Virus record (IMG/VR): IMGVR_UViG_3300027710_000011
Location: 186,001-250,000 of that record
Direction: 5' to 3' (one strand)
Length of the DNA: 64,000 bases
Positions 459 through 46,601 of the stretch are shown here, in pieces. The notes beneath the pieces were generated by a model, which ran no database searches, was not told where the DNA came from, and was given only the letters and a program-made list of their open reading frames with translations. The position numbers and the translations under genes are program-made. Position 1 is the first letter of the stretch, and each line of letters starts with the position of its first letter.

Positions 459-475
459 GTGATATGTGACTGAAA
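459..475 (-). promoter_or_regulatory. Putative early (virion RNAP) promoter TTTCAGTCACATATCAC
   Basis: One of 5 copies of a 17-bp motif, 76 nt upstream of the gp71-like start; resembles phiKZ early TTTaA...TATTAC. Confidence 0.7.
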
Positions 476-502
476 CAACTTAGAACTTAGCGAGGTTTCT
501 CA

Positions 503-847
503 ATGGCAGCAATAGACGGACTCATGGTGTCGGATGGTGCCGACATCTATTACACCCAAGCTTTCCATAACGTGTTGGAAGACCACATGACTTATTTACG
601 TGGTTTGAAGTCAACAACTAGACAAGAGGTTGACCCTATCGACGTTGTTCGTTACCAAGCCGATTTGTTTGGCTTGCTAGGGAAGTTTGGGATTAAGCCC
701 GAGCTTCACTGGACTGTGATGCGTATGTCCAACATTGTGTCACCTGCCAAGGTTCCTGAAGATTTGTCTCACATCCTGGTTCCGGATGAGATGGAGATTA
801 ACCGACTGAAACAAACAGTCGTGACGACCTCTAAAATCCAAAAGTAA
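503..847 (+). CDS. Conserved jumbo-phage hypothetical protein, possibly virion/baseplate
   Basis: 114-aa ORF with GAGG SD, followed by a terminator. Confidence 0.7.
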   Translation: MAAIDGLMVSDGADIYYTQAFHNVLEDHMTYLRGLKSTTRQEVDPIDVVRYQADLFGLLGKFGIKPELHWTVMRMSNIVSPAKVPEDLSHILVPDEMEINRLKQTVVTTSKIQK

Positions 848-856
848 AAGCAAGAC

Positions 857-888
857 TAAAAGGGGTCCCGTGAAGGACCCCTTTTATG
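857..888. terminator. Bidirectional intrinsic terminator
   Basis: TAAAAGGGGTCC-cgtgaa-GGACCCCTTTTATG between convergent genes. Confidence 0.85.
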
Positions 889-895
889 ACGTCAC

Positions 896-2323
896 TTAGA
901 TGCCGGCAAAGCCGCCACCGTTGTTGCCGTTGTTCCCATAGCCGTTGCTATAACCAGGACCGCCGGAACGACCCCAGATCGGAACATGCGGAGGACGTTG
1001 TTGCGGCTGCAATTGCTGACCAGCGAAGGGATGAGCGCCGTAGCCGTAACCCATCTGCTGAACCGGTTCAACGTAGTTCGGCAAGAACTTGTTCAGGCTT
1101 TGCCCAATAACGCCAGGCGTCGCACCGACACGAGCCATACCTGCGTTTTGCTGGATGGGCTGTTGCACGGTCAACGGTGCGTTGTGAACCACATTAGCCG
1201 GCATCCCATAAGCAGGACGCTGAACAACGGGTTGCGGACGCGCTGGAGCTGTAGGACGTGGGCCAAAGATCGTGTCGTTGCTGCGATCTTCAGCAACAGC
1301 CGGAGCTTCGACTTGCTTGACAGTTGCGGGAGCTTGGCTTGTTGACAAGGTATTCTCGCCATCCCAAGGCGCTTGGTTCAGCGCTGGTTTGACGATACTG
1401 CCAGGAACTTCGATCTTCGGCCGATCCGAACCAGGCAGCTTGCCTTCATTGCCGGGCTGAGCTGGGACCAGGTTGATCTTCGCTTGAATCGCAGACAGGT
1501 TCTCGAAGGTGCTGACCCAATCCATCGGGTATTGCATGGAATCACGATCAGGGATCACCGTCTCGCCGAACAGCTCGGTCATTTCGTTCACCAAACCACC
1601 CAGCGAACGAGTAGCTTGCATCACGGCATCCAACGTTGGAGCAACTGTGGAGTCGCTGCCGCGGTTGTAATGACCAGCAATGGCGATGTTCGGCACCATG
1701 TACTCGACCAACTTGATCAAGCATTCACGATGCGCCTTCTTCACGCGGACGCCGTAGATCATGTTGGGCTGACCAGTTGCTGGACGCTTCAACAGCTCTT
1801 CGTAGAACGGGAATGACACAACGGCCAAGCGCTGCACAGTGCGTCCACCAATCTCGCCGCCGCGTTTGATGAAGAAACGCATGAAGCATTTCCCATCTTG
1901 GCTGACCGACATTGCTTCCAGGATTTTCGAGTAGGCTTCGACGATGTCTTCGTCGATATCCTTCAGGTTATCCATGAACAACGTTTGGTCAGGCGTCAGA
2001 TTGACGTGTTGAGCTGGCGAAGTTGCGAGCGTCAACAAGCACAACGTGATGTAGCTGAACGAGATGTTCAGGCGAGCGTTGATCATTTCACGCGTACGTG
2101 TCATGATGTCCGTCTCACCACGGATCAGGCTTTCGTGAAGCGGATGGAACACCACTCGATTGCCCAGATTGGGTTGGGCCAGCTGATTGCGAACCGGGAG
2201 AACCAAGCGCTTGCCGCTGAGCAAGACGGGTTCGTTTTGGTCCACCATCGAGATAAAGCCTTCGTCATCTGCAACCATGCCGGCATTGGCCAAGATGACT
2301 TTATAGATATCATTCAGTTCCAA
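896..2323 (-). CDS. phiKZ gp70-like core nucleus-block protein with Q/P/G/N/Y-rich C-tail
   Basis: 475 aa; lies between the gp69-like and gp71-like genes; low-complexity C-terminus. Confidence 0.75.
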   Translation of the reverse strand: MELNDIYKVILANAGMVADDEGFISMVDQNEPVLLSGKRLVLPVRNQLAQPNLGNRVVFHPLHESLIRGETDIMTRTREMINARLNISFSYITLCLLTLATSPAQHVNLTPDQTLFMDNLKDIDEDIVEAYSKILEAMSVSQDGKCFMRFFIKRGGEIGGRTVQRLAVVSFPFYEELLKRPATGQPNMIYGVRVKKAHRECLIKLVEYMVPNIAIAGHYNRGSDSTVAPTLDAVMQATRSLGGLVNEMTELFGETVIPDRDSMQYPMDWVSTFENLSAIQAKINLVPAQPGNEGKLPGSDRPKIEVPGSIVKPALNQAPWDGENTLSTSQAPATVKQVEAPAVAEDRSNDTIFGPRPTAPARPQPVVQRPAYGMPANVVHNAPLTVQQPIQQNAGMARVGATPGVIGQSLNKFLPNYVEPVQQMGYGYGAHPFAGQQLQPQQRPPHVPIWGRSGGPGYSNGYGNNGNNGGGFAGI

Positions 2324-2338
2324 TTTGGTTTCCTTTTT

Positions 2339-3811
2339 CTAGATATTACCAAAGCCGCCAGTGGCCAGCTCATCAATGTTGACGGACTTGACTTGCACCA
2401 GCGATTCCATCAGGTTGCTGAAGTCGCAAGCAACTTCTTGGATGTGATCGTTGTACGCAGTCAGCACTGGGGCGCTCAAAGCGTCAGCAAACGTAGGTGC
2501 AGAGAACGAAACCTGCGGACCTGTGTCCAGCTGAATAGTGATCTGCGAGAACTCCGTCAACGCGATGTTGGCGAAGACGTCGTAACCAATGCCGTTGCGC
2601 ATTGAGATGTCGTCCAGCAGTTCCTGCTGGATACGATGCTCAAGCAGCGACAAGCTTTGTGGCGACAAGACCATTTCGTTCACCAACGGTGTGGCGTACG
2701 GGATCTGGATGAACGCCCGGCCCGAATAGTTCGTAGCCTGAACGATCATGTGGCGCAGGCCGAACTCAACCATCAGCGCGGGGAGGCTGTTGGACAAGAT
2801 CGTTGCAGCCACTGTTTCCATGTCCGAACCACCCCAGCCATTGAAGTTGAATGCGTCCACAGATGCATCCAAGCCATTGGCCATCTTGACCACCGGAGCC
2901 GATGTCAGCACGAAGCAACGCTCGTCGAGCGTCCTGTCGATATTCATCAGATCTTGGTAGGTGAAGAAGTTCGACACACTGGTGTTGTTCATGCCGCTAA
3001 TCGTACGGATGAACTCGTCGCTGTTGATGCCCTTCGTACCGGACAACATGCCGTAGGTATCAGACATGATCTGGGACGGCTGTTCACTCTGGGTCTTGGC
3101 GGCAGCCATCGCGTAGCTGCCGATCATTTTGCCAGTGTAGTTGGACGACAGCGAGTTCTCGCGATACGAGAGCTTGGGCACACTCGAATTGCTTGACCGC
3201 AGGTCAACCAAGTCGGAGGTCATCATTGGCTGCGTCTGAATCGCACCGATGACGTCTTGGGGACGCATGGAGAGATTCTTGTATGGGTTGGTACCCATAA
3301 CCGACGCTGGACCGGAGTAGTTATTGTTCGCCAAGATGTGGTACGAATCCACAATCGTGGGAACACTGTTCCAGCCGTGACCGTTGTTGATGCGCGTATC
3401 ACGCAAGGTCGTGATCGAGTTGATGAAGAACTGCATCCGTGGATCGAAGTTCCCACCGTGCGACTGATCCGTGTAGCTGGTGTAGCCCTGGATCACTTCA
3501 CGCGTTTGACCGCCGAGGTAGTTGTGCACGATCACTTCCATCGTGTAGTAATAACGCTCGGTGTTCCAGTCGTTGGGAATCAAGATCTGTGACTCAGGCG
3601 CTGCTGACGGCCGCATGAATTCACCGGAGATACCGGCGAACAATTGCGGAGACGCCTTTGCGCCGGTATGACCCACTTGGTCAAAACGCTCTTGAAATTG
3701 GCTGATGACTTGGCCTTGTCCGTTGGTCGTGAACGGACGACGATACTGATCGCCGTAAGTTCCGGAACGTGCCATTGTCAGGGAAACAATTTCGATCCTT
3801 TTATTTGTCAT
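2339..3811 (-). CDS. picA: Phage-nucleus protein import factor PicA/Imp1 (phiKZ gp69-like)
   Basis: 490 aa, directly downstream of gp68 in the conserved Chimalliviridae block; size and position match. Confidence 0.7.
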   Translation of the reverse strand: MTNKRIEIVSLTMARSGTYGDQYRRPFTTNGQGQVISQFQERFDQVGHTGAKASPQLFAGISGEFMRPSAAPESQILIPNDWNTERYYYTMEVIVHNYLGGQTREVIQGYTSYTDQSHGGNFDPRMQFFINSITTLRDTRINNGHGWNSVPTIVDSYHILANNNYSGPASVMGTNPYKNLSMRPQDVIGAIQTQPMMTSDLVDLRSSNSSVPKLSYRENSLSSNYTGKMIGSYAMAAAKTQSEQPSQIMSDTYGMLSGTKGINSDEFIRTISGMNNTSVSNFFTYQDLMNIDRTLDERCFVLTSAPVVKMANGLDASVDAFNFNGWGGSDMETVAATILSNSLPALMVEFGLRHMIVQATNYSGRAFIQIPYATPLVNEMVLSPQSLSLLEHRIQQELLDDISMRNGIGYDVFANIALTEFSQITIQLDTGPQVSFSAPTFADALSAPVLTAYNDHIQEVACDFSNLMESLVQVKSVNIDELATGGFGNI

Positions 3812-3847
3812 TTTTTGCGTACTCCTAGGAGCTGGTTGTCGCGATCG

Positions 3848-5527
3848 TTAAATCAAGGCCCAGTTGGTTTCTGGGGGCGTGAGGACTGGCTGATTCAACA
3901 GCACAGGTGCGTAATGCTCTGGTATCTTAGGCAAAGGTTCAATGGAATCAATGCCAATCAACAACAAAGCTAAGCGAGTGCGGATGTCAGTTGGAATCTT
4001 CATCACTTTGTTACGAGGACTCCAGCCGGCTTTGCTGACCCAATGTTCAGGTAGCGTGATACGCCACTGATACTTACCCAAATCTTCGGTAAGCCTGTCG
4101 ATTACGACAATGACTGGGTTCAGACTTTTTGCAGTCTTAGCGCGAGAGCTCGTGCGTTTGTTGAACACGAAGCGCTTTTGCAGCTCGACGAGCTGTTCTT
4201 TCTCGATTGCATCTTTACGGTCAGCAATCATGCCAATATTGTCATCGATGGTGTCGATTGCAATACCGCCGACCAATGCGGCCAAGTGAAAGTGATTATT
4301 TTCCCACAAGTAAGCTTGAGAGAACGCAATCATTTTCAACAGGTCTGTTTTCTGCAGGCTAGGGATTGAACGCACCGGAACAAAGTGCTTCATTACCCAA
4401 CCAGCAATTGTGACTTGTTCACGAGTCAAACGAACGGCGCTCAGTTCCTGAACACTTTGATAAGACTCTGCGACAAGGCGTTGGAAATCGGGATTACTGC
4501 TCAGACGACGAACCAGTGATCTCTCACCAATTGGTTCGGTGCCCAATGCACGATCCATTTGGATTTCCAGGTAAGCACTGATGGTTTCAATGTTACCGAT
4601 TGACGTTGGTTGCTTGATCTTGAAGCCTTCAAGCTTCGAGAGGTTGCTGTCACCATCGCCGGCGTAGGAGCCTGAGTTCTTAGGACTCACGTTACCTACG
4701 TTGGTTTCGATACCGCGCAACTTCTGCAGAATGAAGTTGTACAGATATGCAGGCAGCGTGGTGATCTGGTTTGTTGTTGCAGGAGATTGGTTAATTCCCC
4801 GTACATCGCCGCAGCACAAACGAGTCACTACGGTTACGCTCAACACCCAGTTCGGAATGTCTTCTGACGAAATGCCCAGAAGAATGGCCGCATCATTGTG
4901 CCGATCTTTGGGGATCGTGTGGCGGATGAAGACCATCAAGCGATCCATTGCCTTGCACCGCGCCACATCGGACATAGCGAGCAATTGATAAGCCTGATAT
5001 TCCTTGAAGATGTTTCCAGCTTCACGACGGGTGTCGGTAGTGAACTGACGCCAGATGGGGAACATGGCACGCAAGGAGATGGACAGAGCCACCAACCAGC
5101 GATAATCCTCATCCAGATAAGTACGCTCCAACGTACCAGCCATTGTGCCGTTGGTATCGAAAGCACGATGAATGCTTGCGGGTACAACGATGTTGGCTCG
5201 AGACCATGCCCACATGAAAACATCTTCCTGAGGATGGTACTCCATCAGGTCGGCGATCAGTGGACGAAGGCGCGCAATACGGACGCTGATATCCCAAACG
5301 TTCTGGAACACAGCGTAGATCTTGTCGTAGATTGCAAAGATCTCGTCTTGCGTTTGCGGTTGGCACTGCGCCCAGTAGCCATTGATCTGCTCGAAGATGT
5401 CGAATTGGAAGTCCAAATCCTTAGAAGGAATGTTCCAACGCAGCTCGACACCTTTGTGCAGAATGACCAGTGCGGGCTCGGTCTTATTAAGACCACTGGC
5501 GTCCTGGGACAAAATGCGAATTTCCAT
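3848..5527 (-). CDS. Non-virion RNAP fifth (promoter-specificity) subunit, phiKZ gp68-like
   Basis: 559 aa; synteny gp67-gp68-gp69. Confidence 0.7.
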   Translation of the reverse strand: MEIRILSQDASGLNKTEPALVILHKGVELRWNIPSKDLDFQFDIFEQINGYWAQCQPQTQDEIFAIYDKIYAVFQNVWDISVRIARLRPLIADLMEYHPQEDVFMWAWSRANIVVPASIHRAFDTNGTMAGTLERTYLDEDYRWLVALSISLRAMFPIWRQFTTDTRREAGNIFKEYQAYQLLAMSDVARCKAMDRLMVFIRHTIPKDRHNDAAILLGISSEDIPNWVLSVTVVTRLCCGDVRGINQSPATTNQITTLPAYLYNFILQKLRGIETNVGNVSPKNSGSYAGDGDSNLSKLEGFKIKQPTSIGNIETISAYLEIQMDRALGTEPIGERSLVRRLSSNPDFQRLVAESYQSVQELSAVRLTREQVTIAGWVMKHFVPVRSIPSLQKTDLLKMIAFSQAYLWENNHFHLAALVGGIAIDTIDDNIGMIADRKDAIEKEQLVELQKRFVFNKRTSSRAKTAKSLNPVIVVIDRLTEDLGKYQWRITLPEHWVSKAGWSPRNKVMKIPTDIRTRLALLLIGIDSIEPLPKIPEHYAPVLLNQPVLTPPETNWALI

Positions 5528-5616
5528 GTAATGCTTATCCTTTTTTACACGTTCGCTAAGTCAAAGGTCGAATTACCTTTGATCAGAATTTGCGGATTGC
5601 ACTAATCCACAAGTAC

Positions 5617-5633
5617 GTGATATGTAACTGAAA
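5617..5633 (-). promoter_or_regulatory. Putative early promoter TTTCAGTTACATATCAC
   Basis: Motif copy 90 nt upstream of gp68, just downstream of the chmC terminator. Confidence 0.7.
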
Positions 5634-5716
5634 CAAGTTAGCTTTCAGTTGACTCACAGTACAGAAGATAACATTTATATGTTTTTTATTACCTATATAT
5701 GGTAAAAAATTAACAT

Positions 5717-5752
5717 CATAAAAGCCACCGGGGAGTACCCGGTGGCTTTATT
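5717..5752 (-). terminator. Terminator of chmC
   Basis: CATAAAAGCCACCGGG-gagta-CCCGGTGGCTTTATT. Confidence 0.85.
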
Positions 5753-11275: not shown

Positions 11276-11406
11276 GACACCCTCGTAAGCTTGAGGAAAA
11301 AGTACGAAAACAAGCAAAAAAATAAGGCCGTGAGACCTTATCTGTCATTCAATAAAATAGACTGACCGAAGCCAATCCTTTTATTGAATGGTGCTCAAGC
11401 AGAGGG

Positions 11407-11450: not shown

Positions 11451-12080
11451 TCACAGCTTACCGCAGAACGGTGAAGTCGGATCTTCTTTTCCAGGGAGCA
11501 TCATGGTCTTGATGAAATCCCAGGTCGAGAGGATCTCGATCTTTTCCGTCACAGACAGCTGAACGTCAGCTGCACTTTCGTCCAGATAGTTCACGCACTG
11601 CCATTCGTATTCTGGATCGTCTGGAGTTTCTTCAACGAGTCCAGTGTTGACCAAGCGCCAGTCGTAATGATCACGGCCGATCGAATCGGGCGCCACGTCA
11701 ACGTAGCTATTTGAATAGCCATCACATTGTTGACGATGATACAACTCACGCACGCCAGGGCTCGCCATAATCCAGCGTTGCATCTTTTGGCCAGCTTGTT
11801 GAACAGAACCCAGGGTCTTGAGTTCACGAACACAATCTGAATCAAACGCATGCTGGACCGTACGAACCGCTGCCTTGGCCAAACGAATGGCTTCAGATCC
11901 ACCGTATTTCTCGAACACTTGCAGGCCGCGATTGACGAATGCTTCGCCAGCTGCCGCCATCGTATTTGAGAAACTGGTAAGTCTTTCTTCAAGGAAATTC
12001 AGGTTGGCTTGGGTTGGCACACCAAACGCGATTGCGTCAAAGTTTGCCTGCCCATGCCCGCCTTGAATAAATACGGGCAT
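11451..12080 (-). CDS. Conserved core protein (probably phiKZ gp59/Imp3-like)
   Basis: 209 aa downstream of gp55; gp number inferred from synteny. Confidence 0.6.
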   Translation of the reverse strand: MPVFIQGGHGQANFDAIAFGVPTQANLNFLEERLTSFSNTMAAAGEAFVNRGLQVFEKYGGSEAIRLAKAAVRTVQHAFDSDCVRELKTLGSVQQAGQKMQRWIMASPGVRELYHRQQCDGYSNSYVDVAPDSIGRDHYDWRLVNTGLVEETPDDPEYEWQCVNYLDESAADVQLSVTEKIEILSTWDFIKTMMLPGKEDPTSPFCGKL

Positions 12081-12103: not shown

Positions 12104-13594
12104 TTAGACCGCTAAAGCCATCATGCGCTGTAGCTTTACCGGATCAGCAGGTTCTTGCAATGATTCAATCCACTCCGCCGTAGTAGCTACCACTGGTTTG
12201 GATAGACTTGCGGAATTGGACATCGATCGAACAGAGTCGATACCGTAGACGCTCATGTAGGGCGCTAAGGTTTCAAGTTTCTTTTCGATCACTTGGTCAA
12301 CAGCCAGCGTGAATTGCAGAGCATCGCCGTCAAAGTCGCAGTTCAGCGCCTTAACGATAAGAATACTCAGCGACACCGTCGGATCTTGCACGTCGGTTTT
12401 CACGCGCGAGATATAGACGTGCTGGATAGATCCACGACCAAGGGATGGGTTTCGATTCAGCGTGCAACTGATACCGACACCGCTTGGAGCTTCTGCGATC
12501 AGTTCTTTGAACAACGAATCCAGGAAAGGATTATAGTGCTCAGCATGCTCATCGATGAACCGGCAAGCTTCATTGGGCGTATAGTCCAACTTCAGCAGCT
12601 TGTTCTTCAAGTGTTCACGCAAAACTGACGTAGCAACGCCCCAGGGAATGTAGATTTCCCGGTGATTGTGAGCCTTGGTAATTGATGACACCACAGCACG
12701 GAAGCTGAAGTGTGACCGGGAAGCAACCACGTGTTTGCGGAAGGTTCCTTCTTTACCAGCCAAGGTATCACGGTAAGTCAGTTCAAAGTACTCGGCCAAC
12801 TGGTTGATCGATTTGACCGTCCGGTTTTCCTTAACGTACGTTTGGAACATGTTGGAGTCTGTGTCAATACCCGCGAGGATATGCACAGCGTCCATTGCGC
12901 CAGTCGTGATTGTGTCCACGAACCAGCCCAGGTCATTCTGTTCCAGCACCAAAAGCGAACGGTGCGGGATTGGAAGATACTGGCAGAAAATCTTGTCACG
13001 CTCAACCTGCAACAAGCGCCTCAAGTTATCGCCTTTACCGCGGTTCTTGCGGAAAAGAGGATGCTCGAATAACTCATGCATGATTTCATCGAAGTTGTCG
13101 ATGAAGTAGTTCAAACCACGATCGATGGGTTTCCCCTTGATCTTGATCTGTTCGATCATGTACAGCTTTTTAGGCGGAACTGCTGTTGGCGAATACATGG
13201 TATCGCACAACCACTGAATGATGTTGAACTTTCCGAAGCCCGATTTGAAACGGTTCTTCATCATAGTCCAGATCAGGGGATTGATCAGAGCACGCACGCC
13301 TTTCGGTGCACGCAACCACGTGATCGGTTCCAGATCCTGATCGAAGATCGGCTTAACGGATGTTCCGCAATGTGCGCAACGCACGCCGATGTTGTATTCA
13401 CCAGTCACTTCACCACACTCGCAGGTCGGGACATTGCTGAGCAAGTCTCCTGAGAATCTAGTAAAGATCAGGTTTTCCAACTTCTTCGCATCGTCTTCAG
13501 AGAAAGACGGTACATCGTTGATGATGACGGCTTCACCACCGCTGCGCTCACGATAGAGCTTGTCGAAATCAACTAACTGGGCGTAGGTCCCCAT
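12104..13594 (-). CDS. Non-virion RNAP beta' N-terminal subunit (gp55-like), uninterrupted
   Basis: CECG...CAHC zinc finger, NRNPSL, catalytic NCDFDGD, GKEGTFRKH. Confidence 0.93.
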   Translation of the reverse strand: MGTYAQLVDFDKLYRERSGGEAVIINDVPSFSEDDAKKLENLIFTRFSGDLLSNVPTCECGEVTGEYNIGVRCAHCGTSVKPIFDQDLEPITWLRAPKGVRALINPLIWTMMKNRFKSGFGKFNIIQWLCDTMYSPTAVPPKKLYMIEQIKIKGKPIDRGLNYFIDNFDEIMHELFEHPLFRKNRGKGDNLRRLLQVERDKIFCQYLPIPHRSLLVLEQNDLGWFVDTITTGAMDAVHILAGIDTDSNMFQTYVKENRTVKSINQLAEYFELTYRDTLAGKEGTFRKHVVASRSHFSFRAVVSSITKAHNHREIYIPWGVATSVLREHLKNKLLKLDYTPNEACRFIDEHAEHYNPFLDSLFKELIAEAPSGVGISCTLNRNPSLGRGSIQHVYISRVKTDVQDPTVSLSILIVKALNCDFDGDALQFTLAVDQVIEKKLETLAPYMSVYGIDSVRSMSNSASLSKPVVATTAEWIESLQEPADPVKLQRMMALAV

Positions 13595-13685: not shown

Positions 13686-15734
13686 TTAGCGCCAACGGCC
13701 CAGGCCAGTGTTCAGGCTGTTTGCCGGACCTTGGGAGGTAGGCATACCGCGATTGAACAGGTTGCTGGCGCCGTTGAGGCCGCCGGTTGCTTGGGCCAGG
13801 AAGCTGGCTTGACCACGGCTGCCGGAGACGATGTCCATGTACGGAGTTTCCGGACGGATCGACAGGCCGGCGTCGGCCATTGCTGCTGCCAGGGCATCCA
13901 GGAACTTGTTGCGGAAGGTCATGCGACGAGCCGCACCAGTCACGGTCAGACCAGCAGAGATCTGGCGAGCGATCTTCAGGCGCTCATGCTGACGCTGTTC
14001 CCACGAGTAGTCCAGCTGAGTGAAGGTGTCCGACCAGGCACGGCCTTGCTCAGGATTGGTGGCGCCCAGGACGTTCAGCACGCACAGTTGGTCGATTTCA
14101 CGCAGGTCAAGGGTACGGCCCTTGTTGTCAGTGAAATAACCCAGGTGGATGCGGTTCTCGTCGTTCACCATCACCGGCTCGCCGTCGGCGAAGTACTTGG
14201 CCATGTGACCACCGGTCAGCAGGTTGGCCGCGTCGATGATGTCTTGGTTGGCGCGAGGATTGCAGGTGGCGTTGGCGAACACAGAGTTCTGCCAAGTGCT
14301 GGCGCCGCATTCTTCAACGTCGATCGAGATGACCAGCTCAGGACGCACGAAGGCCGACAGCAAGCTGTGCAGATCGTGAGGCGTGAAGGTGTTCGAACGG
14401 GTCTGGTCGAAAGGCTTGCCGAAGCCGGAAGGATCGTTGCCATTGTTGACTTCGATGCCGATGGCGCCGATGTCGTGATGGTTGGCGTCCAGGCCGGCCG
14501 AGCGAGCGAAGGCGCCCATCCAGTTGTTCTGACGCTTCAGGATGTTGACGGCAGCCAAACCCCACAGCCAGCCAGGCAGCGTTGCCAGATCGCTCGACGA
14601 TGTGTCAGTGATCACGAAACGCGGCAGGTACTTGTAGGGCATCTGGTTGGGCAGCGGAGCCTGAGTGGCGAACGGCGAAGCGAACTGGTTCTGCTGCGCG
14701 CCCATCATGCTCTCGTTTTCCCACCACATCAGGTCCAGGAAGCCGCCGATCTTGAAGATCTCGGTGTTGACCTGGCCGCTGTTCAGCGACTGGATCACAT
14801 TGCGCTTGCCTTGTTGTTGGCCGGTCACCAGCGAGTAGCTCACCACGACGTCTTGACGAACGGGGTTGCCCACGCTGTCGCTGCCGTTGGGCTGGTTGTA
14901 GGTCAACTTGGCGACGGAGTCCAGACGGCCACCGGCAGCTTGCAGCAGCTCGGGCAGTTCCAGGTCCTTGAAGTCGGTCTTGACGGTTGTGTTCAAGATC
15001 GTGCCGCAAGCGGTCAAGGCGTTGGCCAGGGTACGCTGAACCAGGTTCAGGTCCTTGTAGTTGTAGCCCACAGGGATCACTTCGGCTTCAGCGTCGTAGA
15101 TGTTGATGCCGGGGTACAGCGAAGTCAGGGTTGCTTCCACCACGCCGCGGTAGTCTTCGTCGTAGGCGTCGCCGACAACGCGCTGCAGTTCGATGATGGC
15201 GTTGGTACCGGGAGCGGTCAGTTGTTGCACAGGCAGTTGCTCAGCCGTGTCGGCCAGCAGCAGAACGTGGCAAGCGACGCCGGCGTTCGGGGAATCAGCC
15301 AGGCGGACGCACAGGACAACGGCGGAAGCGAACAGGCGAGTAGCGGACTCGTTGGCGTTGATCGGCACGATCTCGATGTTGTAGCCGGTGTCTTTGGCTT
15401 CCAGCGTCGAGCGAATCGATTCGATGAACTTCTTGATGGCGTCAGCGGCAGGAGCGGACGACAGAGGCGCGGTGTTGCCGGAACGCAGGAGCGACAGCAG
15501 ATTCGAGGTTTGGGTAGACATAGTTGTTTTCAGCTGATTGGTTGTTGCAGGTACTTTTGCCGTGGCGACCGGCATCGGTTTCGTGGGAACAGCAGGAACG
15601 ACGGGCTTTTGCGAGATCAGTGCACTGGGCATCGCAGCGGCCATAGCCGTTTCATTCTTGACAGGGCGCTCAGCCTTTGGTGTGGGCACACCGCTGACTG
15701 GAGAACCTTGCTCTTCGTCGTCGACGTGAAGCAT
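13686..15734 (-). CDS. chmA: Chimallin, major phage-nucleus shell protein
   Basis: 682 aa immediately upstream of gp55; chimallin-like segments (ISIDVEECGASTW, NRIHLGYF, DLREIDQL); extreme codon bias. Start may be 15521. Confidence 0.9.
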   Translation of the reverse strand: MLHVDDEEQGSPVSGVPTPKAERPVKNETAMAAAMPSALISQKPVVPAVPTKPMPVATAKVPATTNQLKTTMSTQTSNLLSLLRSGNTAPLSSAPAADAIKKFIESIRSTLEAKDTGYNIEIVPINANESATRLFASAVVLCVRLADSPNAGVACHVLLLADTAEQLPVQQLTAPGTNAIIELQRVVGDAYDEDYRGVVEATLTSLYPGINIYDAEAEVIPVGYNYKDLNLVQRTLANALTACGTILNTTVKTDFKDLELPELLQAAGGRLDSVAKLTYNQPNGSDSVGNPVRQDVVVSYSLVTGQQQGKRNVIQSLNSGQVNTEIFKIGGFLDLMWWENESMMGAQQNQFASPFATQAPLPNQMPYKYLPRFVITDTSSSDLATLPGWLWGLAAVNILKRQNNWMGAFARSAGLDANHHDIGAIGIEVNNGNDPSGFGKPFDQTRSNTFTPHDLHSLLSAFVRPELVISIDVEECGASTWQNSVFANATCNPRANQDIIDAANLLTGGHMAKYFADGEPVMVNDENRIHLGYFTDNKGRTLDLREIDQLCVLNVLGATNPEQGRAWSDTFTQLDYSWEQRQHERLKIARQISAGLTVTGAARRMTFRNKFLDALAAAMADAGLSIRPETPYMDIVSGSRGQASFLAQATGGLNGASNLFNRGMPTSQGPANSLNTGLGRWR

Positions 15735-15871
15735 CTTCGTCCTTTTATGACTTGTTTTCGGTTCGTACTTCTTGCTTCGACCGCTACATGTGGGGCAAGT
15801 AACGATCTATACATCCACATCCCTGCAGAAATGTTGACGGGAGAAACCAGTTAACCCTATTCTCCAGGGAA

Positions 15872-15888
15872 GTGATATGTGGTTGAAA
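15872..15888 (-). promoter_or_regulatory. Putative early promoter TTTCAACCACATATCAC
   Basis: Motif copy upstream of chmA. Confidence 0.7.
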
Positions 15889-16107
15889 TTCTTTCGAATC
15901 CAGTTCAGAAGCACGGGCATTAATTAGGTATTCGGCAAAGCGAGACACCATAGGGTACCCCCAGACCCAGCGCAAACCAGGCCTGGAAAGAATCAGCTGT
16001 GAAGCCTCTTCCACATTATACATCTAACTCTAGTAAATTTTGACATTCCGTCGTAAGCACTGGTTACTATGGTATGTCAATCATCTACTCTTCATTAATC
16101 CGCTGCT

Positions 16108-17199: not shown

Positions 17200-17201
17200 C
17201 T

Positions 17202-17262
17202 CATACAGCACCAGGTTAGTAGGGTCGCCACTTCTGTGGGACCTGCTACCTGGAGCTGTATG
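17202..17262. terminator. Long hairpin between convergent genes
   Basis: CATACAGC-accagg...cctgg-a-GCTGTATG. Confidence 0.7.
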
Positions 17263-17277
17263 ACTATATGTCGTCAA

Positions 17278-24289: not shown

Positions 24290-25291
24290 TTACAGCACGA
24301 TGCCGGAATCAGTCGGCTTGTCGGAGTTGCTCAGGATCGGGCCGTTATCGACGCGGGCTTTGACAGCCTTCTCGATTGCGACCAGACGAGCGCTCATGTC
24401 CTTGGCAACAACGGCCGGCGTGTTTGCCAGCGTGACCAGTGACAGCGGAGCAATGTCCAGGACTTGACGGTTGACCTTTTCGTTCAGGTAACCGATCGAG
24501 CCGTATTCGGGAGTGAAGTTCAGGTCCAGCGTAGCGCCGGGCTTGAGCACCGAGACCACGGTGATGACGTTGCCGGTGGTGATGTCGTCCAAGTTCTCAG
24601 TTTGGTCGGACAGGTAGCGGACCAGGCCGACGACGCGAGGCTTGTAGCTGGTGACCTTGTCGAAGCGCAAGAAGTTGGCCAAGTCCATGCTGTCGAGTTC
24701 CGTATTCTCGCGAGAGAAAACAGTCATCAACGTGGAGACCAGTTCCACAGCGGCACGGTCCACAACAGCACGAGGAGTTTCCTTGCTGTTCTGGAAGTAG
24801 GCCATGACCACAGGCGTTTCGCGCTTCTGAGCAACACCTTCGTACGACTTGAGGGTGTTCAGCGTGTTCTTGATTTCCAGAGCACTGTCGGTGCCGCCGA
24901 TGGTGATGACCACGGTGGGAATGCCGTCGCTCAGCAGTTCGGAAACCAGGGAAGGAGCAATCACACTGCCGGAGCCGCCGTGGGCCGAAGACAGAACGAT
25001 GGCCAAGTCGCCGGGTGGGAACTTCTGGAGGATGGAGCGAACATGACGACTGATCTCTTGGTAGTTTTCGGCACGAACCTTGCCGGAACCATCCATGCCT
25101 TCGAAAACCCAGGTGAACTCGGGCGGGAGGCCTTTGCTGTTGGACAGCGAGGTATCGATGTAGACCGGAGAGATGGTTGCCATCCCCAGTTCTTGTGCGT
25201 TGCGGAAGGGCTCAATCAACTTGGCAACGTTGATCCCCGCACCCCCTGCTGCGTACAGAGTGATGTTGCCTTTGCGTGTTTCAATTGTCAT
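24290..25291 (-). CDS. phuZ: Phage tubulin PhuZ
   Basis: AAGGAGINVA, DTS, GMDGSGK and GGSGS tubulin motifs; short C-tail DSGIVL. Confidence 0.95.
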   Translation of the reverse strand: MTIETRKGNITLYAAGGAGINVAKLIEPFRNAQELGMATISPVYIDTSLSNSKGLPPEFTWVFEGMDGSGKVRAENYQEISRHVRSILQKFPPGDLAIVLSSAHGGSGSVIAPSLVSELLSDGIPTVVITIGGTDSALEIKNTLNTLKSYEGVAQKRETPVVMAYFQNSKETPRAVVDRAAVELVSTLMTVFSRENTELDSMDLANFLRFDKVTSYKPRVVGLVRYLSDQTENLDDITTGNVITVVSVLKPGATLDLNFTPEYGSIGYLNEKVNRQVLDIAPLSLVTLANTPAVVAKDMSARLVAIEKAVKARVDNGPILSNSDKPTDSGIVL

Positions 25292-25401
25292 ATCTTCCTC
25301 AGATGGTTCAAGGGTTGCAAATCAGACGAGCTTTTTAACAGCCCTCTAATATGAAGGGTGCATCCTGTTCTTTTTTAGATTTAGGCCACACCTCCAAGTC
25401 A

Positions 25402-25418
25402 GTGATATGTGACTGAAA
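25402..25418 (-). promoter_or_regulatory. Putative early promoter TTTCAGTCACATATCAC
   Basis: Identical 17-mer to 459-475, upstream of phuZ. Confidence 0.7.
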
Positions 25419-25459
25419 GTAAGTTGATTGTTTTCAGCACTCGAATAGAGGTTACACAC

Positions 25460-31586: not shown

Positions 31587-31631
31587 GTCGTGAGATACAT
31601 CGGCGCTTGCGCGTCAATTGCTTCAGTGATT

Positions 31632-31683
31632 ATAAAAAGCCAACACCTATCCGGGAACTAACTCGGGTAGGTGTTGGCTTTAT
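31632..31683 (+). terminator. Long terminator hairpin
   Basis: AAGCCAACACCTA...TAGGTGTTGGCTT, 13-bp stem. Confidence 0.8.
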
Positions 31684-31818
31684 TCCGTCACTTTATCTTT
31701 TTTTATTATATACACCAAGCTTATGGTGAATGCGCTGCATCCATGCGGCCATTAAATGGAGAGGTTATGCATCACTTCAAAGATTTTTGTCTTAGAGAGA
31801 AGTTGGAGTAACTAAGTA

Positions 31819-33999
31819 ATGATACTCTTCTTAGACGACTGGAAGAAATATCCAAGAGCAATCATCGACATGAAGACGACGAACACGTCCTTCATTCGAC
31901 TGGCTTCGGTTTATCGCGCAATGGGTATCGAGAACAATGCGTTCTTGCTCGCCCTACTGAATCCAGACTTGCAAGGAGTTGATCCATACTCGCCTGATTT
32001 GACGCTTGAGCAGATGGCGGCGATCAGTTTGGAATGCAAGCACAATCCTTGGTATTTCTTTCGAGAGATTGCTAAGGTCCCTGCTTCGGGCGGTAACGAC
32101 GCAATGCGGCTTCAGGCCAATCGAGGCAATATTGCATTGTTCTGGTTGTTCTTCAATCACATCACGCAATTTCTAATTCAGCCACGGCAGACAGGTAAGT
32201 CTATTAACGTTGACGCGTTGATGATCTTGCTGCTGAACATCATCTGTATTGCTACAAAGATCAACTTGCTGACAAAGGACGACACTCTGCGTCGTGCCAA
32301 CGTTCAGCGGATCAAGGACATGATGGAGGAACTCCCTCCATACCTGTTCCTGAAGGGTCCGAGTGATCTGAACAATACAGAAGAAATTACCATCAACGCG
32401 CTGGGTAACCGTTACACGACTCACGTTCCACAAAGCTCTCCAAAGCGTGCGGATAACATGGGCCGGGGTTTGACTACTGCGGTTATGCATGTTGACGAAG
32501 CACCCTTCCAGGTGAACATTGAGATTGCGTTGAAAGCAGCTCTGCCTGCTATGACTGCAGCTATCGAAGCAGCTAAGCGTGAAATGGCTCCGTATGGAAC
32601 TATCTTCACTACAACGGCTGGTAAGAAGGATGACAAGGACGGCGCTTTCATTTATCGCGAGATGATGGAGTCTGCACCTTGGACTGAGAAGTTCTTGGAT
32701 TGCAAGAACCTTGTAGATCTTGAAACAACTATTCGTACCAATAGCCGAGGAGGTAAGGTTCGAGTTCGTTGCGTCTTCAATCATCGGCAACTGGGTAAGA
32801 CGGATGAATGGATGTTGCGAGCTCTGGAGGATTCCTTCCAGTCTGGCGATTCTGCTAACCGAGACTTCTTCAACATGTGGACGTCCGGCTCTCAGACCAA
32901 CCCGATCCCTATTCACTTGCTCGAGCGCATTGCTGGCTCACGCATGGAGCCTTTGGAAACAGAGATCTCCAGTCAAGACCGTTACATCACGCGCTGGTAT
33001 ATTCCGGCCGATACGATTCATGGCCGCATGGCGAACGGTAAGTTTGTCCTAGTCCTTGATACCAGCGAAGCCGTCGGCAATGACGATATTGGTTTGTTGC
33101 TGATCGATCTGGCTACAACCGAAGTGATTGCGTCAGGTACGTTCAACGAAACCAACTTGATTAAGTTCTCTCGTTGGCTGTTGCAATGGTTCATCCGCTT
33201 TGAGAACATCACCGGTTTGTTGGAGCGACGCTCTACTGGTGGGATGATCATGGACTACTTGATCGTTTACATGATCGAAGCTGGTATTGATCCCTTCAAG
33301 CGCTTGTTCAACACAGTGGTGCAAGACTACCGTGAGAATCACGACAACTTCGAAGAGATTCGTAAACCAATGAATCGTCGCGATCCTCGTATCTACGATC
33401 GCTTCAAGAAGACGTTTGGTTTCTCCACTTCAGGCGGTGACGGTACGTATAGTCGTAATGGACTTTACTCCAGCACACTGATGATGGCTGCTAAGCGTGG
33501 TTGTGATTATGTTTACGACAGTACCCTTATTGACCAGGTGAATGCCTTGATCAATAAGAACGGTCGAGTCGATCACCCGCAAGGCGGACACGACGATATG
33601 GTCATCGCGTGGCTGCTTGGTTTCTGGTTCATGACTAAAGCAGTTAACGTTGGTTTCTACGGTATTGATTCACGACTACTGATGTCTAAGAATCAAGACT
33701 TGTCGAATCCGGCCAGCGTAATACCTACTCAAGATCAAGAGGTCCAAAACGCTCTGCGTGATAAGATCGAAGGTCTGACAGAAGAGCTCGGTAAAGAGCG
33801 TGACAAGTTTGTAGCTCAGCGTTTGGAGCAAGAGATTCGAAGTCTGATGAAATACGTCATCGTAAAAGAAGACGAAATCTACAGCGTCGATGAACTGCTT
33901 AGAACGGCTAAGGAAAAGCGTGTTGAGAAGAAACGCTTTAACAGCTACCAGCAAAGTCCTTATCAAATGACTTCGCTGCAACCAGGTTACTATCGATAG
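31819..33999 (+). CDS. terL: Terminase large subunit (gp25-like)
   Basis: Walker A PRQTGKS, Walker B HVDEAPF, TTTAG, nuclease DTSEA and HDDMVIAWL. Confidence 0.95.
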   Translation: MILFLDDWKKYPRAIIDMKTTNTSFIRLASVYRAMGIENNAFLLALLNPDLQGVDPYSPDLTLEQMAAISLECKHNPWYFFREIAKVPASGGNDAMRLQANRGNIALFWLFFNHITQFLIQPRQTGKSINVDALMILLLNIICIATKINLLTKDDTLRRANVQRIKDMMEELPPYLFLKGPSDLNNTEEITINALGNRYTTHVPQSSPKRADNMGRGLTTAVMHVDEAPFQVNIEIALKAALPAMTAAIEAAKREMAPYGTIFTTTAGKKDDKDGAFIYREMMESAPWTEKFLDCKNLVDLETTIRTNSRGGKVRVRCVFNHRQLGKTDEWMLRALEDSFQSGDSANRDFFNMWTSGSQTNPIPIHLLERIAGSRMEPLETEISSQDRYITRWYIPADTIHGRMANGKFVLVLDTSEAVGNDDIGLLLIDLATTEVIASGTFNETNLIKFSRWLLQWFIRFENITGLLERRSTGGMIMDYLIVYMIEAGIDPFKRLFNTVVQDYRENHDNFEEIRKPMNRRDPRIYDRFKKTFGFSTSGGDGTYSRNGLYSSTLMMAAKRGCDYVYDSTLIDQVNALINKNGRVDHPQGGHDDMVIAWLLGFWFMTKAVNVGFYGIDSRLLMSKNQDLSNPASVIPTQDQEVQNALRDKIEGLTEELGKERDKFVAQRLEQEIRSLMKYVIVKEDEIYSVDELLRTAKEKRVEKKRFNSYQQSPYQMTSLQPGYYR

Positions 34000-42872: not shown

Positions 42873-42881
42873 TGTCTGAAA

Positions 42882-42971
42882 ATAAAAGGAGAGGGAAACC
42901 TCTCCTTTTATGCTGTTTCAAACAAAAAAGAAAAGAGAGCATAAACGGAGGCCTGATGGCCTCCGTTTATT
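42882..42971. terminator. Tandem terminators between convergent genes
   Basis: ATAAAAGGAGAGG-gaaa-CCTCTCCTTTTATG and CATAAACGGAGGCC-tgat-GGCCTCCGTTTAT. Confidence 0.85.
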
Positions 42972-42974
42972 TCA

Positions 42975-43933: not shown

Positions 43934-43954
43934 GAACGATCCTTTTTCTATTCA

Positions 43955-45209: not shown

Positions 45210-45246
45210 TCCTTTCTTTTTATTGAGTCAAAAAATAAAAGTACGC

Positions 45247-45280
45247 AAAAGTAGAGATGGAGGTGACCCCCATCTCTACT
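45247..45280 (-). terminator. Terminator
   Basis: GTAGAGATGG...CCATCTCTAC with adjacent A-tract. Confidence 0.75.
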
Positions 45281-45310
45281 CTACGTTACAACACCGGCAA
45301 AGCCGTTGAC

Positions 45311-45790
45311 TTACTTGGAAGCCAATTGCTTGGTGGCCAGGGCCGACAGGTGAGCGCGGATGTTGCCGAGCTGACCGGTCTTGCGCGATGCGCGCAGGGT
45401 GATTTCAGGCATGATCACGCCGAACTTGTCGCTCTTCTCAGCACCAGGGGCGCCGACCAGCTTGGAGCGATAGAACACGGTGCCGAACTGGTTGCCGGAA
45501 GGGTCCTTGACGACCAGCTCGGAGGAGGCCAGCTCAGGGTTCTTCTTCATCACCGGAATGGCAGCTTCGCCGTGGGCCAGAGTTTGGGCCTGGGCCAGTT
45601 CTTCGACGAAGGTGAACACGCGCTTGTATTGCTCAACGCTCACGTCTTCAGGCAGCAGCGATTCGACGGTGGCGGCCTGGGTGGCGGCGCCGGTCTTGGG
45701 GTCGATGGTGATGTTCAGCTTGGCAGCCAGTTCGCGAGTTGCGTCGCTGATCACGATTGCTTTGACTTCAGGGGTCTTTGTTGCAGACAT
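45311..45790 (-). CDS. Abundant conserved jumbo-phage protein, possibly DNA-binding
   Basis: Strong C/G codon bias, own terminator; DNA-binding role is only a guess. Confidence 0.75.
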   Translation of the reverse strand: MSATKTPEVKAIVISDATRELAAKLNITIDPKTGAATQAATVESLLPEDVSVEQYKRVFTFVEELAQAQTLAHGEAAIPVMKKNPELASSELVVKDPSGNQFGTVFYRSKLVGAPGAEKSDKFGVIMPEITLRASRKTGQLGNIRAHLSALATKQLASK

Positions 45791-45929
45791 GGGAAACATC
45801 CTTTTGGATTTTGGTTGATATCAGAGGAGTTCTTTGTGAATAGCAAGATCGTAAAGTTTGGTTGCATTACGATCCTGAACCATCCACGCCGAGCTCCTCT
45901 ATTCTCGGCATGAACGATGTCATTACTTC

Positions 45930-46469
45930 TTAACCTGGACGACGATTGAATGTCGGTCGATCAGATTGTTGGCGATAACCGCCGTCGTCACGTTGCTGGT
46001 ACGGACGTTGCGGGCGATCACCGTAGCGCGGACGCTGATCAAACTGCTCTTGGAAGCCAGCTTGGATTTCGCGTTCAACCTTGTCAGCAACCGCGTTCTG
46101 CTTGTCAGCAGGAACCGTGATGGTCGAGATGTGTTTCATCAACTGCTTGCTGATGAGGCGCACTTTCAAGACACCAGGCTTCTGACCCGCTGGCAATTCC
46201 GCATTGTCGTCCAGAAACTTCTGAACCCGACCCCAGTTGCACAAGACAACGTAGTGGCCACTTTGTGGGTGCACGCAAACCGACATGTGTGCAGTCACTT
46301 CGTTGTCATCTTCAGTTGCAGTCCACAAGCCACGTTGAGCGGCTTTCAAGTCTTCCAACTGCAGAGCGATCTCTGGAGCAGAAGAAATGCTTTTGGTCAA
46401 AGCGCTGAAACTAACAGTCTTTTCACAGATTGTCAGGTGAGTGCGCTTGGGTTGCTTAGTTGGTGTCAT
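45930..46469 (-). CDS. Hypothetical early protein with R/Q/G-rich tail
   Basis: Start MTPTKQPK with GAGGA SD, downstream of a promoter motif copy. Confidence 0.7.
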   Translation of the reverse strand: MTPTKQPKRTHLTICEKTVSFSALTKSISSAPEIALQLEDLKAAQRGLWTATEDDNEVTAHMSVCVHPQSGHYVVLCNWGRVQKFLDDNAELPAGQKPGVLKVRLISKQLMKHISTITVPADKQNAVADKVEREIQAGFQEQFDQRPRYGDRPQRPYQQRDDGGYRQQSDRPTFNRRPG

Positions 46470-46584
46470 GTTCCTCGACTTGGTTGGTGTGGTTGTCACT
46501 CGCATCTGATTTACGCGAGCGCTGTAAAAAACTTCCAGCTTTGCTGCATGAAATATTAGAAGGTTAACCCAATACTCCAAATTG

Positions 46585-46601
46585 GTGATATGTGGTTATA
46601 A
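46585..46601 (-). promoter_or_regulatory. Putative early promoter TTATAACCACATATCAC
   Basis: Degenerate fifth copy of the motif. Confidence 0.6.

What the first reader, a model, noticed from the sequence alone, without database searches (positions are those of the whole stretch)
459..46601. 17-bp promoter motif marks a nucleus-assembly regulon
GTGATATGTRRYTGAAA on the plus strand occurs at 459, 5617, 15872 and 25402, with a degenerate copy at 46585; the 459 and 25402 copies are identical. Read on the minus strand (TTTCA...ACATATCAC), each copy lies ~75-140 nt upstream of gp71, gp68-picA-gp70, chmA, phuZ or the 46469 orphan. This matches the phiKZ early consensus TTTaA...TATTAC with a T-to-C change. 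It implicates the uncharacterised 46469 gene as co-regulated with the nucleus machinery. The plus-strand reading contains TATG (the phiKZ late element), and three copies face a divergent plus-strand gene, so they may be bidirectional.
Basis: partly seen in the sequence, partly recalled or inferred. Interest (0 to 1): 0.6.

Follow-up and report, generated by a model that had tools for sequence, protein, structure and literature searches.

The report
Early promoters of a jumbo phage
The repeated 17-base motif is real, but it is the ordinary early-gene promoter that this nucleus-forming giant phage's virion-packaged RNA polymerase most likely reads; there are 25 copies genome-wide, so it is not a switch specific to the phage-nucleus genes.

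Summary
There are four exact copies and one two-mismatch copy of the 17-mer, all on the + strand, where chance predicts none.

The 17-mer is part of a roughly 39-bp asymmetric motif read on the minus strand. It has a TCTA-type box near -30, a TTTCA block near -20, an invariant ACATATCAC, and a TG 6-7 nt further on, which is the predicted start.

The window lies in a 276.8-kb uncultivated chimallivirus from a subsurface metagenome. That genome holds exactly 25 copies. All are on one strand and all are intergenic, and the next-best score is far lower.

They head minus-strand operons. These include every non-virion RNA polymerase subunit gene, chmA, phuZ and picA, plus many arrays of small unknown genes. 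No copy precedes a virion gene or faces a plus-strand gene in its own orientation.

The same four blocks, in the same register, make up the 33 phiKZ early-promoter sites I recovered. They also occur in Burkholderia phage FLC9 and two other IMG/VR jumbo phages. In all four they sit upstream of the gp54, gp68 and gp71 orthologues.

Verdict: this is the virion-RNA-polymerase early promoter class, a new member of a known kind. "Nucleus-assembly regulon" is too narrow. The orphan gene is one more early gene. The bidirectional TATG idea is unsupported but not excluded.

The parts
451..489 (-). Early promoter copy 1 (model positions -22 to +16; core 459-467). Predicted start near 451-453. Heads the gp71/73-like, gp74-like and helicase operon, which runs off the left end of the window.
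   Evidence: Model score 36.7, intergenic. Start codon at 383, 75 nt after the core. Downstream ORF matches PHIKZ071.
5609..5647 (-). Early promoter copy 2 (core 5617-5625). Predicted start G at 5610. Heads gp68-like (3848-5527), gp69/PicA-like (2339-3811) and gp70-like (896-2323).
   Evidence: Score 37.7. Orthology to PHIKZ068-070. A promoter sits 36-54 nt before the gp68 orthologue in G1, G3, FLC9 and phiKZ.
857..886 (-). GC-rich hairpin with flanking A and T runs that ends the gp68-gp69-gp70 operon. It lies convergent with the + gene 503-847.
   Evidence: Terminator-like site with 13 pairs.
15864..15902 (-). Early promoter copy 3 (core 15872-15880). Predicted start G at 15865. Heads chmA (13686-15734), gp55-like nvRNAP subunit (12104-13594) and the gp59-like gene (11451-12080).
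   Evidence: Score 40.8. phrog_4795 and phrog_2987. No terminator-like site between chmA and the gp55-like gene; the next ones are at about 11320-11378. The core is unchanged in relatives' contigs. A promoter lies directly upstream of chmA in G1, G3, FLC9 and phiKZ.
25394..25432 (-). Early promoter copy 4 (core 25402-25410). Predicted start G at 25395. Heads phuZ (24290-25291).
   Evidence: Score 40.5. phrog_4733. The core is 9/9 invariant in six relatives down to 65% PhuZ identity, while only 33% of all columns are invariant.
46577..46615 (-). Early promoter copy 5 (core 46585-46593). Predicted start G at 46578. Heads the orphan gene (45930-46469) and five further small genes down to 42975.
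   Evidence: Best score in the genome, 42.7. Core and start region conserved in relatives with 59-88% protein identity.
46619..46649 (-). Intrinsic terminator (10-bp GC-rich stem, 4-nt loop, TTTATG tail). It ends the late vRNAP and head-protease operon just before promoter copy 5, forming a terminator-promoter cassette.
   Evidence: Local fold -31.2 kcal/mol. Coordinates. A compensatory G/C exchange keeps the stem in L108 and L109.
45930..46469 (-). Orphan early gene, 179 aa. It has an N-terminal domain and an Arg/Gln/Pro-rich tail, and is restricted to this clade.
   Evidence: No Pfam or PHROG hit. Three homologue clusters only (88%, 59% and 49% identity). In the two whose contigs I fetched (88% and 59%) the gene sits just after the head-protease gene. 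Models are poor: Atlas pLDDT 0.43, AlphaFold2 pLDDT 55.
49970..55983 (-). Genes of two virion RNA polymerase subunits (gp178-like 49970-54355, gp180-like 54358-55983). This is the enzyme inferred to read the motif. Their operon starts at a divergent junction that has no early motif.
   Evidence: phrog_3148 (E 0) and phrog_2986 (E 1e-195). tblastn to PHIKZ178 and PHIKZ180. No motif at 55984-56081.

Best explanation
The motif is the early promoter class of this chimallivirus. The multisubunit virion RNA polymerase (vRNAP) is packaged in the capsid and ejected with the DNA. It recognises a roughly 39-bp asymmetric element on the minus strand: a -30 box (T..A.TCTA), a -20 block (TTTCAR), an extended -10-like block (ACATATCAC), and a start at the conserved G about 7 nt after the block. 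From the 25 copies it transcribes the first wave of genes. That wave includes all subunits of the second, non-virion polymerase, the nuclear shell protein ChmA, PhuZ, PicA and many small accessory genes. The five window copies are ordinary members of this set. Shown here: the motif, its count, strand and position rules, its conservation in relatives, and its same-register match to phiKZ early promoters at orthologous positions.
For: Exactly 25 sites score 23-43 and the next best scores 10. All are minus-strand and intergenic, with none in reversed-sequence controls. 23 of the 25 have a start codon 19-139 nt downstream, 19 of them with a strong ribosome-binding-site match. Five sites sit at divergent junctions and one in a +/+ junction, where no upstream minus gene exists. 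This rules out a 3'-end element. No site is oriented toward any of the 51 + genes, and virion-gene blocks have none. All four vRNAP subunit orthologues are present and lack the motif. All nvRNAP subunit orthologues (gp55, gp68, gp71/73, gp74, gp123) lie in motif-headed operons. The motif model finds one-stranded site families in phiKZ (33 sites, the TATATTAC class), FLC9 (24), G1 (16) and G3 (37), with the same four blocks in register. A site lies directly upstream of the gp54, gp68 and gp71 orthologues in all four genomes. Literature: RNAP-encoding jumbo phages carry a phage-specific motif at about -10 of early operons, shown to be the vRNAP promoter wherever tested (PMC7598289). phiKZ and phiR1-37 start 6 nt after the element, and AR9 has element-(6N)-G+1 (PMC5312081). 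201phi2-1 and phiKZ early promoters are conserved at -10, -20 and -30 (PMC11512511). Footprints: the core is 9/9 invariant at phuZ across six relatives and 8/9 at the orphan.
Against: There is no transcript data. No RNA run holds this phage, so the starts, the timing and the identity of the polymerase rest on homology. The core is less AT-rich than published early motifs. Two copies have no obvious gene behind them (genome 47478 and 51384). My gene calls come from a home-made caller, so some junction classes may be off.
Confidence: 0.88

Rival explanations
1. One reading: the motif defines a dedicated regulon for phage-nucleus assembly (chmA, phuZ, picA and neighbours), and so marks the orphan as nucleus machinery.
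For: Four of the five window copies precede chmA, phuZ, the picA operon and gp71. The first 16 transcribed bases of the chmA and orphan copies are 14/16 identical.
Against: 20 further copies precede unrelated, mostly unknown small genes. gp68, gp71/73, gp74 and gp55 are polymerase subunits, not nucleus parts. In phiKZ, phuZ is the fourth gene of an early operon with no promoter of its own. The leader similarity scores 22, barely above the 99th percentile of shuffles at 20. The orphan has no detectable relation to any nucleus protein.
Confidence: 0.03
2. An add-on rather than an alternative: at divergent junctions the complement of the core (which contains TATG) also serves as a phiKZ-type late promoter for the facing + strand virion gene, giving a compact early/late bidirectional module.
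For: TATG is about 3-fold enriched 21-60 nt before + strand operon starts: 16 of 40 have one, against about 14% expected. At 4 of the 6 copies facing a + gene, the motif's own TATG lies 29-51 nt before that ATG: window 503 and 25460, genome 47514 and 254242. A gp123 orthologue is present, and gp123 is the subunit that binds TATG in phiKZ (PMC12809450).
Against: TATG is present in every copy because CATA is part of the core, yet 18 of 25 copies face no + gene. 15 of 20 divergent junctions lack the motif. In phiKZ (6/6) and FLC9 (6/7), early sites at divergent junctions have no TATG on the other strand. The + gene at 16108 has its own TATGs at -37 and -32. The spacing to the facing ATG varies by indels among relatives.
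Confidence: 0.12
3. The motif is read by another polymerase, either the non-virion RNAP (a middle class) or the host sigma-70 holoenzyme, rather than by vRNAP.
For: No direct enzyme data exist for this phage. In 201phi2-1 some nvRNAP subunit genes are driven by middle or late promoters (PMC11512511).
Against: The motif has no -35/-10 hexamer pair, and sigma-70-like sites are not enriched: 11 found against 17.2 expected. It aligns with the phiKZ class that was shown experimentally to be early and vRNAP-dependent (PMC7598289, PMC5312081).
Confidence: 0.05
4. The copies are remnants of a small mobile or duplicated cassette without a common function.
For: Three copies (genome 62835, 111117, 121166) share near-identical 30-nt stretches joined to a terminator hairpin.
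Against: Similarity ends at the roughly 39-bp motif in most copies. Strand and position rules are strict. Motif positions are conserved across relatives while the flanks diverge.
Confidence: 0.02

Closest known systems
phiKZ early (virion RNA polymerase) promoters, TATATTAC class (Ceyssens 2014, as cited in PMC8244752 and PMC7598289)
   Same: The four-block layout is in the same register: a -30 box, a TTT-A block, an 8-9 nt -10-like block ending in AC, and TG 6-7 nt downstream. Copy number is similar (33 sites by my scan, 28-32 published). All sit on the leading strand and are intergenic. Positions before gp54, gp68, gp70.1/71 and gp121-123 are shared.
   Different: The core is ACATATCAC rather than TATATTAC, differing at 2 of the 8 aligned bases, so it is less AT-rich. 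The -30 box is TCTA(G)A rather than ATTCAAA. phuZ has its own copy here but not in phiKZ. The genome is 50% GC against 37%.
201phi2-1 early promoters (PMC11512511)
   Same: Conserved -10, -20 and -30 regions. Regulatory elements keep their position relative to homologous genes.
   Different: In 201phi2-1 not all nvRNAP subunit genes have an early promoter nearby. Here every one lies in a motif-headed operon. Not compared at sequence level here.
AR9 early promoters, AT-rich element-(6N)-G+1 (PMC5312081)
   Same: A long conserved element followed by six bases and a conserved G start, read by a virion multisubunit RNAP. About 40 copies.
   Different: AR9 is not a nucleus-forming phage and has uracil DNA. 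The element sequence differs.
phiKZ late promoters, TATG at -3 to +1 (PMC7598289, PMC12809450)
   Same: The complement of the core contains TATG.
   Different: The late signal is four bases read by nvRNAP gp123. Here the TATG is a by-product of the core and mostly faces no gene.

Membership tests
Chimallivirus/phiKZ-type vRNAP early promoter | Long, highly conserved -10-like element related to TATATTAC | tested here: met
   ACATATCAC is exact in 17 of the 25 sites, and the others differ at 1-3 of its 9 bases. 6 of 8 aligned bases match phiKZ in the same register.
Chimallivirus/phiKZ-type vRNAP early promoter | Additional conserved blocks near -20 and -30 | tested here: met
   TTTCA block and T..A.TCTA box. 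The same columns are conserved in phiKZ, FLC9, G1 and G3, as reported for phiKZ and 201phi2-1 (PMC11512511).
Chimallivirus/phiKZ-type vRNAP early promoter | Transcription start about 6 nt downstream of the element, usually G | not testable with these tools
   The sequence is compatible: the seventh base after the core is G in 14 of the 17 exact-core sites and in 16 of the 23 sites that have a downstream gene. No RNA data exist.
Chimallivirus/phiKZ-type vRNAP early promoter | Intergenic, one orientation, tens of copies, in front of early operons including nvRNAP subunits and chmA; absent from virion-gene blocks | tested here: met
   25/25 are minus-strand and intergenic. All nvRNAP subunit genes and chmA lie downstream. 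None occur in structural regions.
Chimallivirus/phiKZ-type vRNAP early promoter | Genome encodes the virion RNAP (gp80, gp149, gp178, gp180 orthologues) | tested here: met
   tblastn hits at the phiKZ coordinates of all four. The names of three (gp149, gp178, gp180) were confirmed in the phiKZ record. gp80 is inferred from its position just before PHIKZ081.
Chimallivirus/phiKZ-type vRNAP early promoter | Activity without new protein synthesis and independent of host RNAP | not testable with these tools
   Needs infection experiments or in vitro transcription. The phage is known only from metagenomes.
Chimallivirus/phiKZ-type vRNAP early promoter | Conserved position relative to orthologous genes in related phages | tested here: met
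   A site lies within 200 nt upstream of the estimated start of the gp68, gp71 and chmA orthologues in G1, G3, FLC9 and phiKZ. It is also conserved upstream of phuZ and the orphan in closer relatives.
phiKZ-type late promoter (TATG) on the + strand | TATG at the start site of a late gene transcript | tested here: inconclusive
   TATG is present by construction in all copies. It is suitably placed (29-51 nt before an ATG) at only 4 of 25. Relatives' divergent sites mostly lack it.
Host sigma-70 promoter | TTGACA and TATAAT hexamers 16-18 nt apart | tested here: not met
   None of the listed sigma-70-like sites lies on the minus strand at a motif copy. Such sites are below shuffle expectation: 11 against 17.2.

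The most novel reading that the evidence does not exclude
At the few tight divergent junctions (window 459/503 and 25402/25460; genome 47478/47514 and 254196/254242), the early promoter core doubles, on its other strand, as a TATG late promoter. One 9-bp element would then be read by the virion polymerase early in one direction and by the non-virion polymerase late in the other.
Probability: 0.1. Interest if true: 0.5.

Novelty: new member of a known kind. Interest (0 to 1): 0.3.

Why it matters
The motif gives a clean, sequence-only map of the early regulon of an uncultivated, deeply divergent nucleus-forming phage: 25 promoters with predicted start sites. Its chimallin is at most 34% identical to that of any cultured phage in the collection searched. 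The map shows that the virion-polymerase promoter keeps one four-block architecture across very different genomes: phiKZ (37% GC), this phage (50% GC) and FLC9 (56% GC). It also keeps its position in front of the shell protein gene and the second polymerase's genes. One model can therefore pick out early genes in metagenomic chimalliviruses, including candidate host-takeover and anti-defence genes. For the finding as submitted the result is deflating: there is no nucleus-specific control element.

Tried and rejected
- **Megablast of the chmA region against phages:** no match.
- **Chimallin search in viral contigs:** no confirmed relative.
- **Exact 17-mer scan of IMG/VR:** 38 hits, mostly single and probably chance. 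Four jumbo contigs were real relatives.
- **RNA evidence:** no RNA run holds the phage. The one 'RNA?' run (X11) is a guess kept as contigs, so it shows neither starts nor strand. The variant table is truncated, so I use it only as weak support.
- **Papers:** the phiKZ TSS tables were not held, and Ceyssens 2014 was not held either.
- **Orphan protein:** no Pfam hit, no PHROG hit, no Atlas look-alike, and an AlphaFold2 model at pLDDT 55 that was too poor to search with. I made no fold search and no large profile search, because the claim does not rest on absence of relatives.
- **Leader comparison among the 25 copies:** the top matches were only ribosome-binding regions.
- **Candidate small RNA behind genome site 47478:** no Rfam hit. 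At the equivalent place in FLC9 the downstream RNA has no stable fold, z +1.9.
- **phuZ leader block:** unique in the genome, so it is not a second promoter class.
- **Complex prediction and other genetic codes:** not used, as nothing called for them.
- **Operators' limits:** The reads call used 5,201 letters.
Full report
**What the window is.** The window is bases 186001-250000 of a 276,772-bp IMG/VR virus record with 49.7% GC. The only run that holds the whole test stretch is a subsurface metagenome.

It is a nucleus-forming jumbo phage, a chimallivirus.
- The ORF at 13686-15734(-) matches the nuclear shell protein family (phrog_4795, E 3e-90).
- The ORF at 24290-25291(-) matches tubulin PhuZ (phrog_4733, E 8e-80).
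- The best chimallin match among 50,697 phage records is only 34% identical (Burkholderia phage FLC9).
- 67 of my 268 gene calls have tblastn matches in phiKZ, and window 896-25460 is colinear with phiKZ 31.9-64.4 kb.
- That gp69 is PicA is from my own knowledge of the literature, not from a tool.

**The observation.** The 17-mer occurs exactly four times, all on the + strand, with none expected. Allowing three mismatches adds only the 46585 copy. Genome-wide there are 7 exact copies and 22 within three mismatches, every one on the + strand.

Read on the minus strand, the invariant part is ACATATCAC. It has 17 exact copies in the genome, all minus-strand and all intergenic, although my calls leave only about 13% of the genome non-coding. 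In the window there are 5 against 0.46 expected.

**The full element.** Aligning the copies shows information well beyond the 17-mer:
- T at -22, A at -19 and TCTA at -17 to -14
- a TTTYARYY block at -8 to -1
- the nine-base core
- a TG at the sixth and seventh bases after the core

A weight matrix over these 39 positions, iterated to convergence, finds exactly 25 sites scoring 23-43. The next best score in either strand is 10, and reversed-sequence controls give none. All 25 read on the minus strand and all are intergenic. The 46585 copy scores highest of all, so it is a full member, not a degenerate one.

**Position relative to genes.**
- Start codons: 23 of the 25 sites have a start codon 19-139 nt downstream on the minus strand, 19 of them with a strong ribosome-binding-site match. 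The window copies have the longer leaders, 75-137 nt.
- Junction classes: 18 sites lie between two minus-strand genes, five at divergent junctions and one between two + genes. The last, scored 'convergent', is a missed gene call.
- Not a 3' element: the divergent and +/+ cases have no upstream minus gene, so the element belongs to the 5' end of the downstream gene.
- Plus-strand genes: no copy points toward any of the 51 + strand genes, and 15 of 20 divergent junctions have none.
- Layout along the genome: the copies head long arrays of small unknown genes (42-141 kb) and the conserved replication/transcription block (162-211 kb). They are absent from the virion-gene blocks.
- Non-virion polymerase: every subunit orthologue (gp55, gp68, gp71/73, gp74, gp123) lies in an operon headed by a copy.
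- Virion polymerase: the four subunit orthologues (gp80, gp149, gp178, gp180) do not. gp80 is assigned from its coordinates only.
- Terminators: 14-15 copies sit 12-58 nt after a strong GC-rich hairpin with a TTTATG tail, forming terminator-promoter cassettes. The one before the orphan is at 46619-46649.

**Relatives.**
- phiKZ core: TATATTAC, the sequence I recalled as the published phiKZ early-promoter core, occurs 33 times forward and 9 times reverse in phiKZ, against 10-12 in controls. Its context shows the same layout.
- Scan with this phage's matrix: it recovers one-stranded site families in phiKZ, in FLC9 and in two IMG/VR jumbo phages, G1 (3300046507_000773) and G3 (3300028603_000018). 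I found those two through the exact motif.
- After per-genome refinement: the families number 33, 24, 16 and 37 sites. Their consensus lines up column by column with the 25 here: -30 box, TTT-A block, [CT]ATAT[CT]AC, then TG.
- Positional conservation: a site lies directly upstream of the gp68, gp71 and chmA orthologues in all four genomes. For phuZ this holds only in G1. In phiKZ, phuZ is the fourth gene of the gp36 operon.
- phuZ footprint: closer relatives, fetched through PhuZ and orphan homologues, give footprints. At phuZ, six sequences down to 65% protein identity keep 9/9 core bases plus the AATC, TC and T-G positions, while only 33% of all columns are invariant.
- Orphan footprint: at the orphan, relatives at 59-88% identity keep 8/9 core bases and the whole start region. 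The upstream terminator stem is kept by a compensatory change.
- Metagenome contigs: contigs of relatives laid on the chmA region differ at flanking and degenerate positions but not in the core. That table is truncated, so this is weak support.

**Mechanism.** Published work says that each RNAP-encoding jumbo phage carries its own conserved motif centred near -10 upstream of early operons. Wherever it has been tested, this motif is the promoter of the virion RNA polymerase (PMC7598289). phiKZ has 28-32 such promoters on the leading strand (PMC8244752, PMC10914365). In phiKZ and phiR1-37 the start lies 6 nt after the element, and AR9 has element-(6N)-G+1 (PMC5312081). phiKZ and 201phi2-1 early promoters are conserved at -10, -20 and -30, with positions kept relative to homologous genes (PMC11512511).

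The element here fits each point. I therefore infer the following sequence of events:
1. The ejected virion polymerase initiates at the G about 7 nt after ACATATCAC. The predicted minus-strand starts are 5610, 15865, 25395, 46578 and about 452.
2. It produces the first wave of transcripts.
3. The non-virion polymerase assembled from that wave then takes over.

The motif, its distribution and its homology are shown here.

A nucleus-specific regulon is not supported. Twenty copies lie elsewhere, and the window operons also encode polymerase subunits.

The orphan (179 aa) has an N-terminal domain and an Arg/Gln/Pro-rich tail. It has no family hit and only three homologue clusters. In the two clusters whose contigs I fetched, the gene sits right after the head-protease gene. 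Models are poor. The orphan is an early gene of unknown role.

For the bidirectional idea there is a hint. TATG is about threefold enriched 21-60 nt before + operon starts, and at four junctions the motif's own TATG lies 29-51 nt before the facing ATG. Against it, the TATG comes with the core in every copy, most copies face no + gene, and divergent-junction early sites in phiKZ and FLC9 lack it. I rate it about 0.1. It cannot be tested without 5' ends.

Host sigma-70-type sites are not enriched.

**Verdict.** The feature is real and strongly non-random, and it is correctly read as a minus-strand promoter related to phiKZ early promoters. It is the general early promoter class of this phage, a new member of a known kind. 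It is of modest interest beyond giving a clean early-gene map for an uncultivated chimallivirus.

Noticed in passing
outside the window: genome 47282-47486 (locus L111 about 1783-1987), minus strand: One early-promoter copy (core ACATATGAC) sits between two + genes and reads toward the 3' end of the DnaB-like helicase gene (PHIKZ118 orthologue). The roughly 190 nt behind it fold at -103 kcal/mol (z -7.5) and end in a long hairpin plus a run of 11 U right at the helicase stop. This is a candidate early small RNA. It has no Rfam match. FLC9 has a weak site at the equivalent place, but the sequence behind it does not fold stably.
   Followed up: partly
outside the window: genome 50210-51384 (L111 4711-5885), minus strand: Behind another early-promoter copy there are about 1.2 kb with no minus-strand ORF over 65 aa before the next gene. 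A 13-bp perfect hairpin lies at genome 50438-50468. This may be a long leader, tiny ORFs or a non-coding transcript.
   Followed up: partly
window 25341-25359 (minus strand), in the phuZ 5' leader: A 20-nt block (CACCCTTCATATTAGARGGC) has one variable position, G or A, across six relatives down to 65% PhuZ identity, while its surroundings diverge. It is unique in the genome. Its complement contains a TATG 107 nt before the divergent + gene at 25460. It could be a leader RNA element or that gene's promoter.
   Followed up: partly
genome-wide; window example 46619-46649: 14-15 of the 25 promoters follow a GC-rich hairpin flanked by AAAG...CTTTATG. Three copies (genome 62835, 111117, 121166) share almost identical 30-nt terminator-promoter joints, as if the cassette had been duplicated. 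The TTTATG tail also precedes several + genes.
   Followed up: partly
window 17200-17277 and about 31600-31820, compared with L115 18072-18842 and 2297-3223: A sister genome (PhuZ 97% identical) carries an I-TevI/NUMOD3-like gene between the DNA polymerase gene and the gp52-like gene, and an HNH_3 gene next to the 732-aa gene. Both are missing at the same places in this window. This looks like presence/absence polymorphism of homing endonuclease genes.
   Followed up: no
window 46470-46578 (minus strand), orphan leader: The 109-nt leader of the orphan gene is unusually well conserved in relatives whose protein is only 59% identical, including a GGAAGTTTTTTACAG stretch. The first 16 transcribed bases resemble those of the chmA leader (14/16).
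   Followed up: partly
whole genome: There is only one tRNA gene (Thr, genome 112133-112207, minus strand) in 277 kb. The gp71 and gp73 parts of the non-virion polymerase beta subunit appear to be one uninterrupted 715-aa ORF here, whereas the phiKZ record lists gp71, gp72 and gp73 separately. tblastn matched only residues 18-397 to gp71, so the gp73 part is presumed from length.
   Followed up: no
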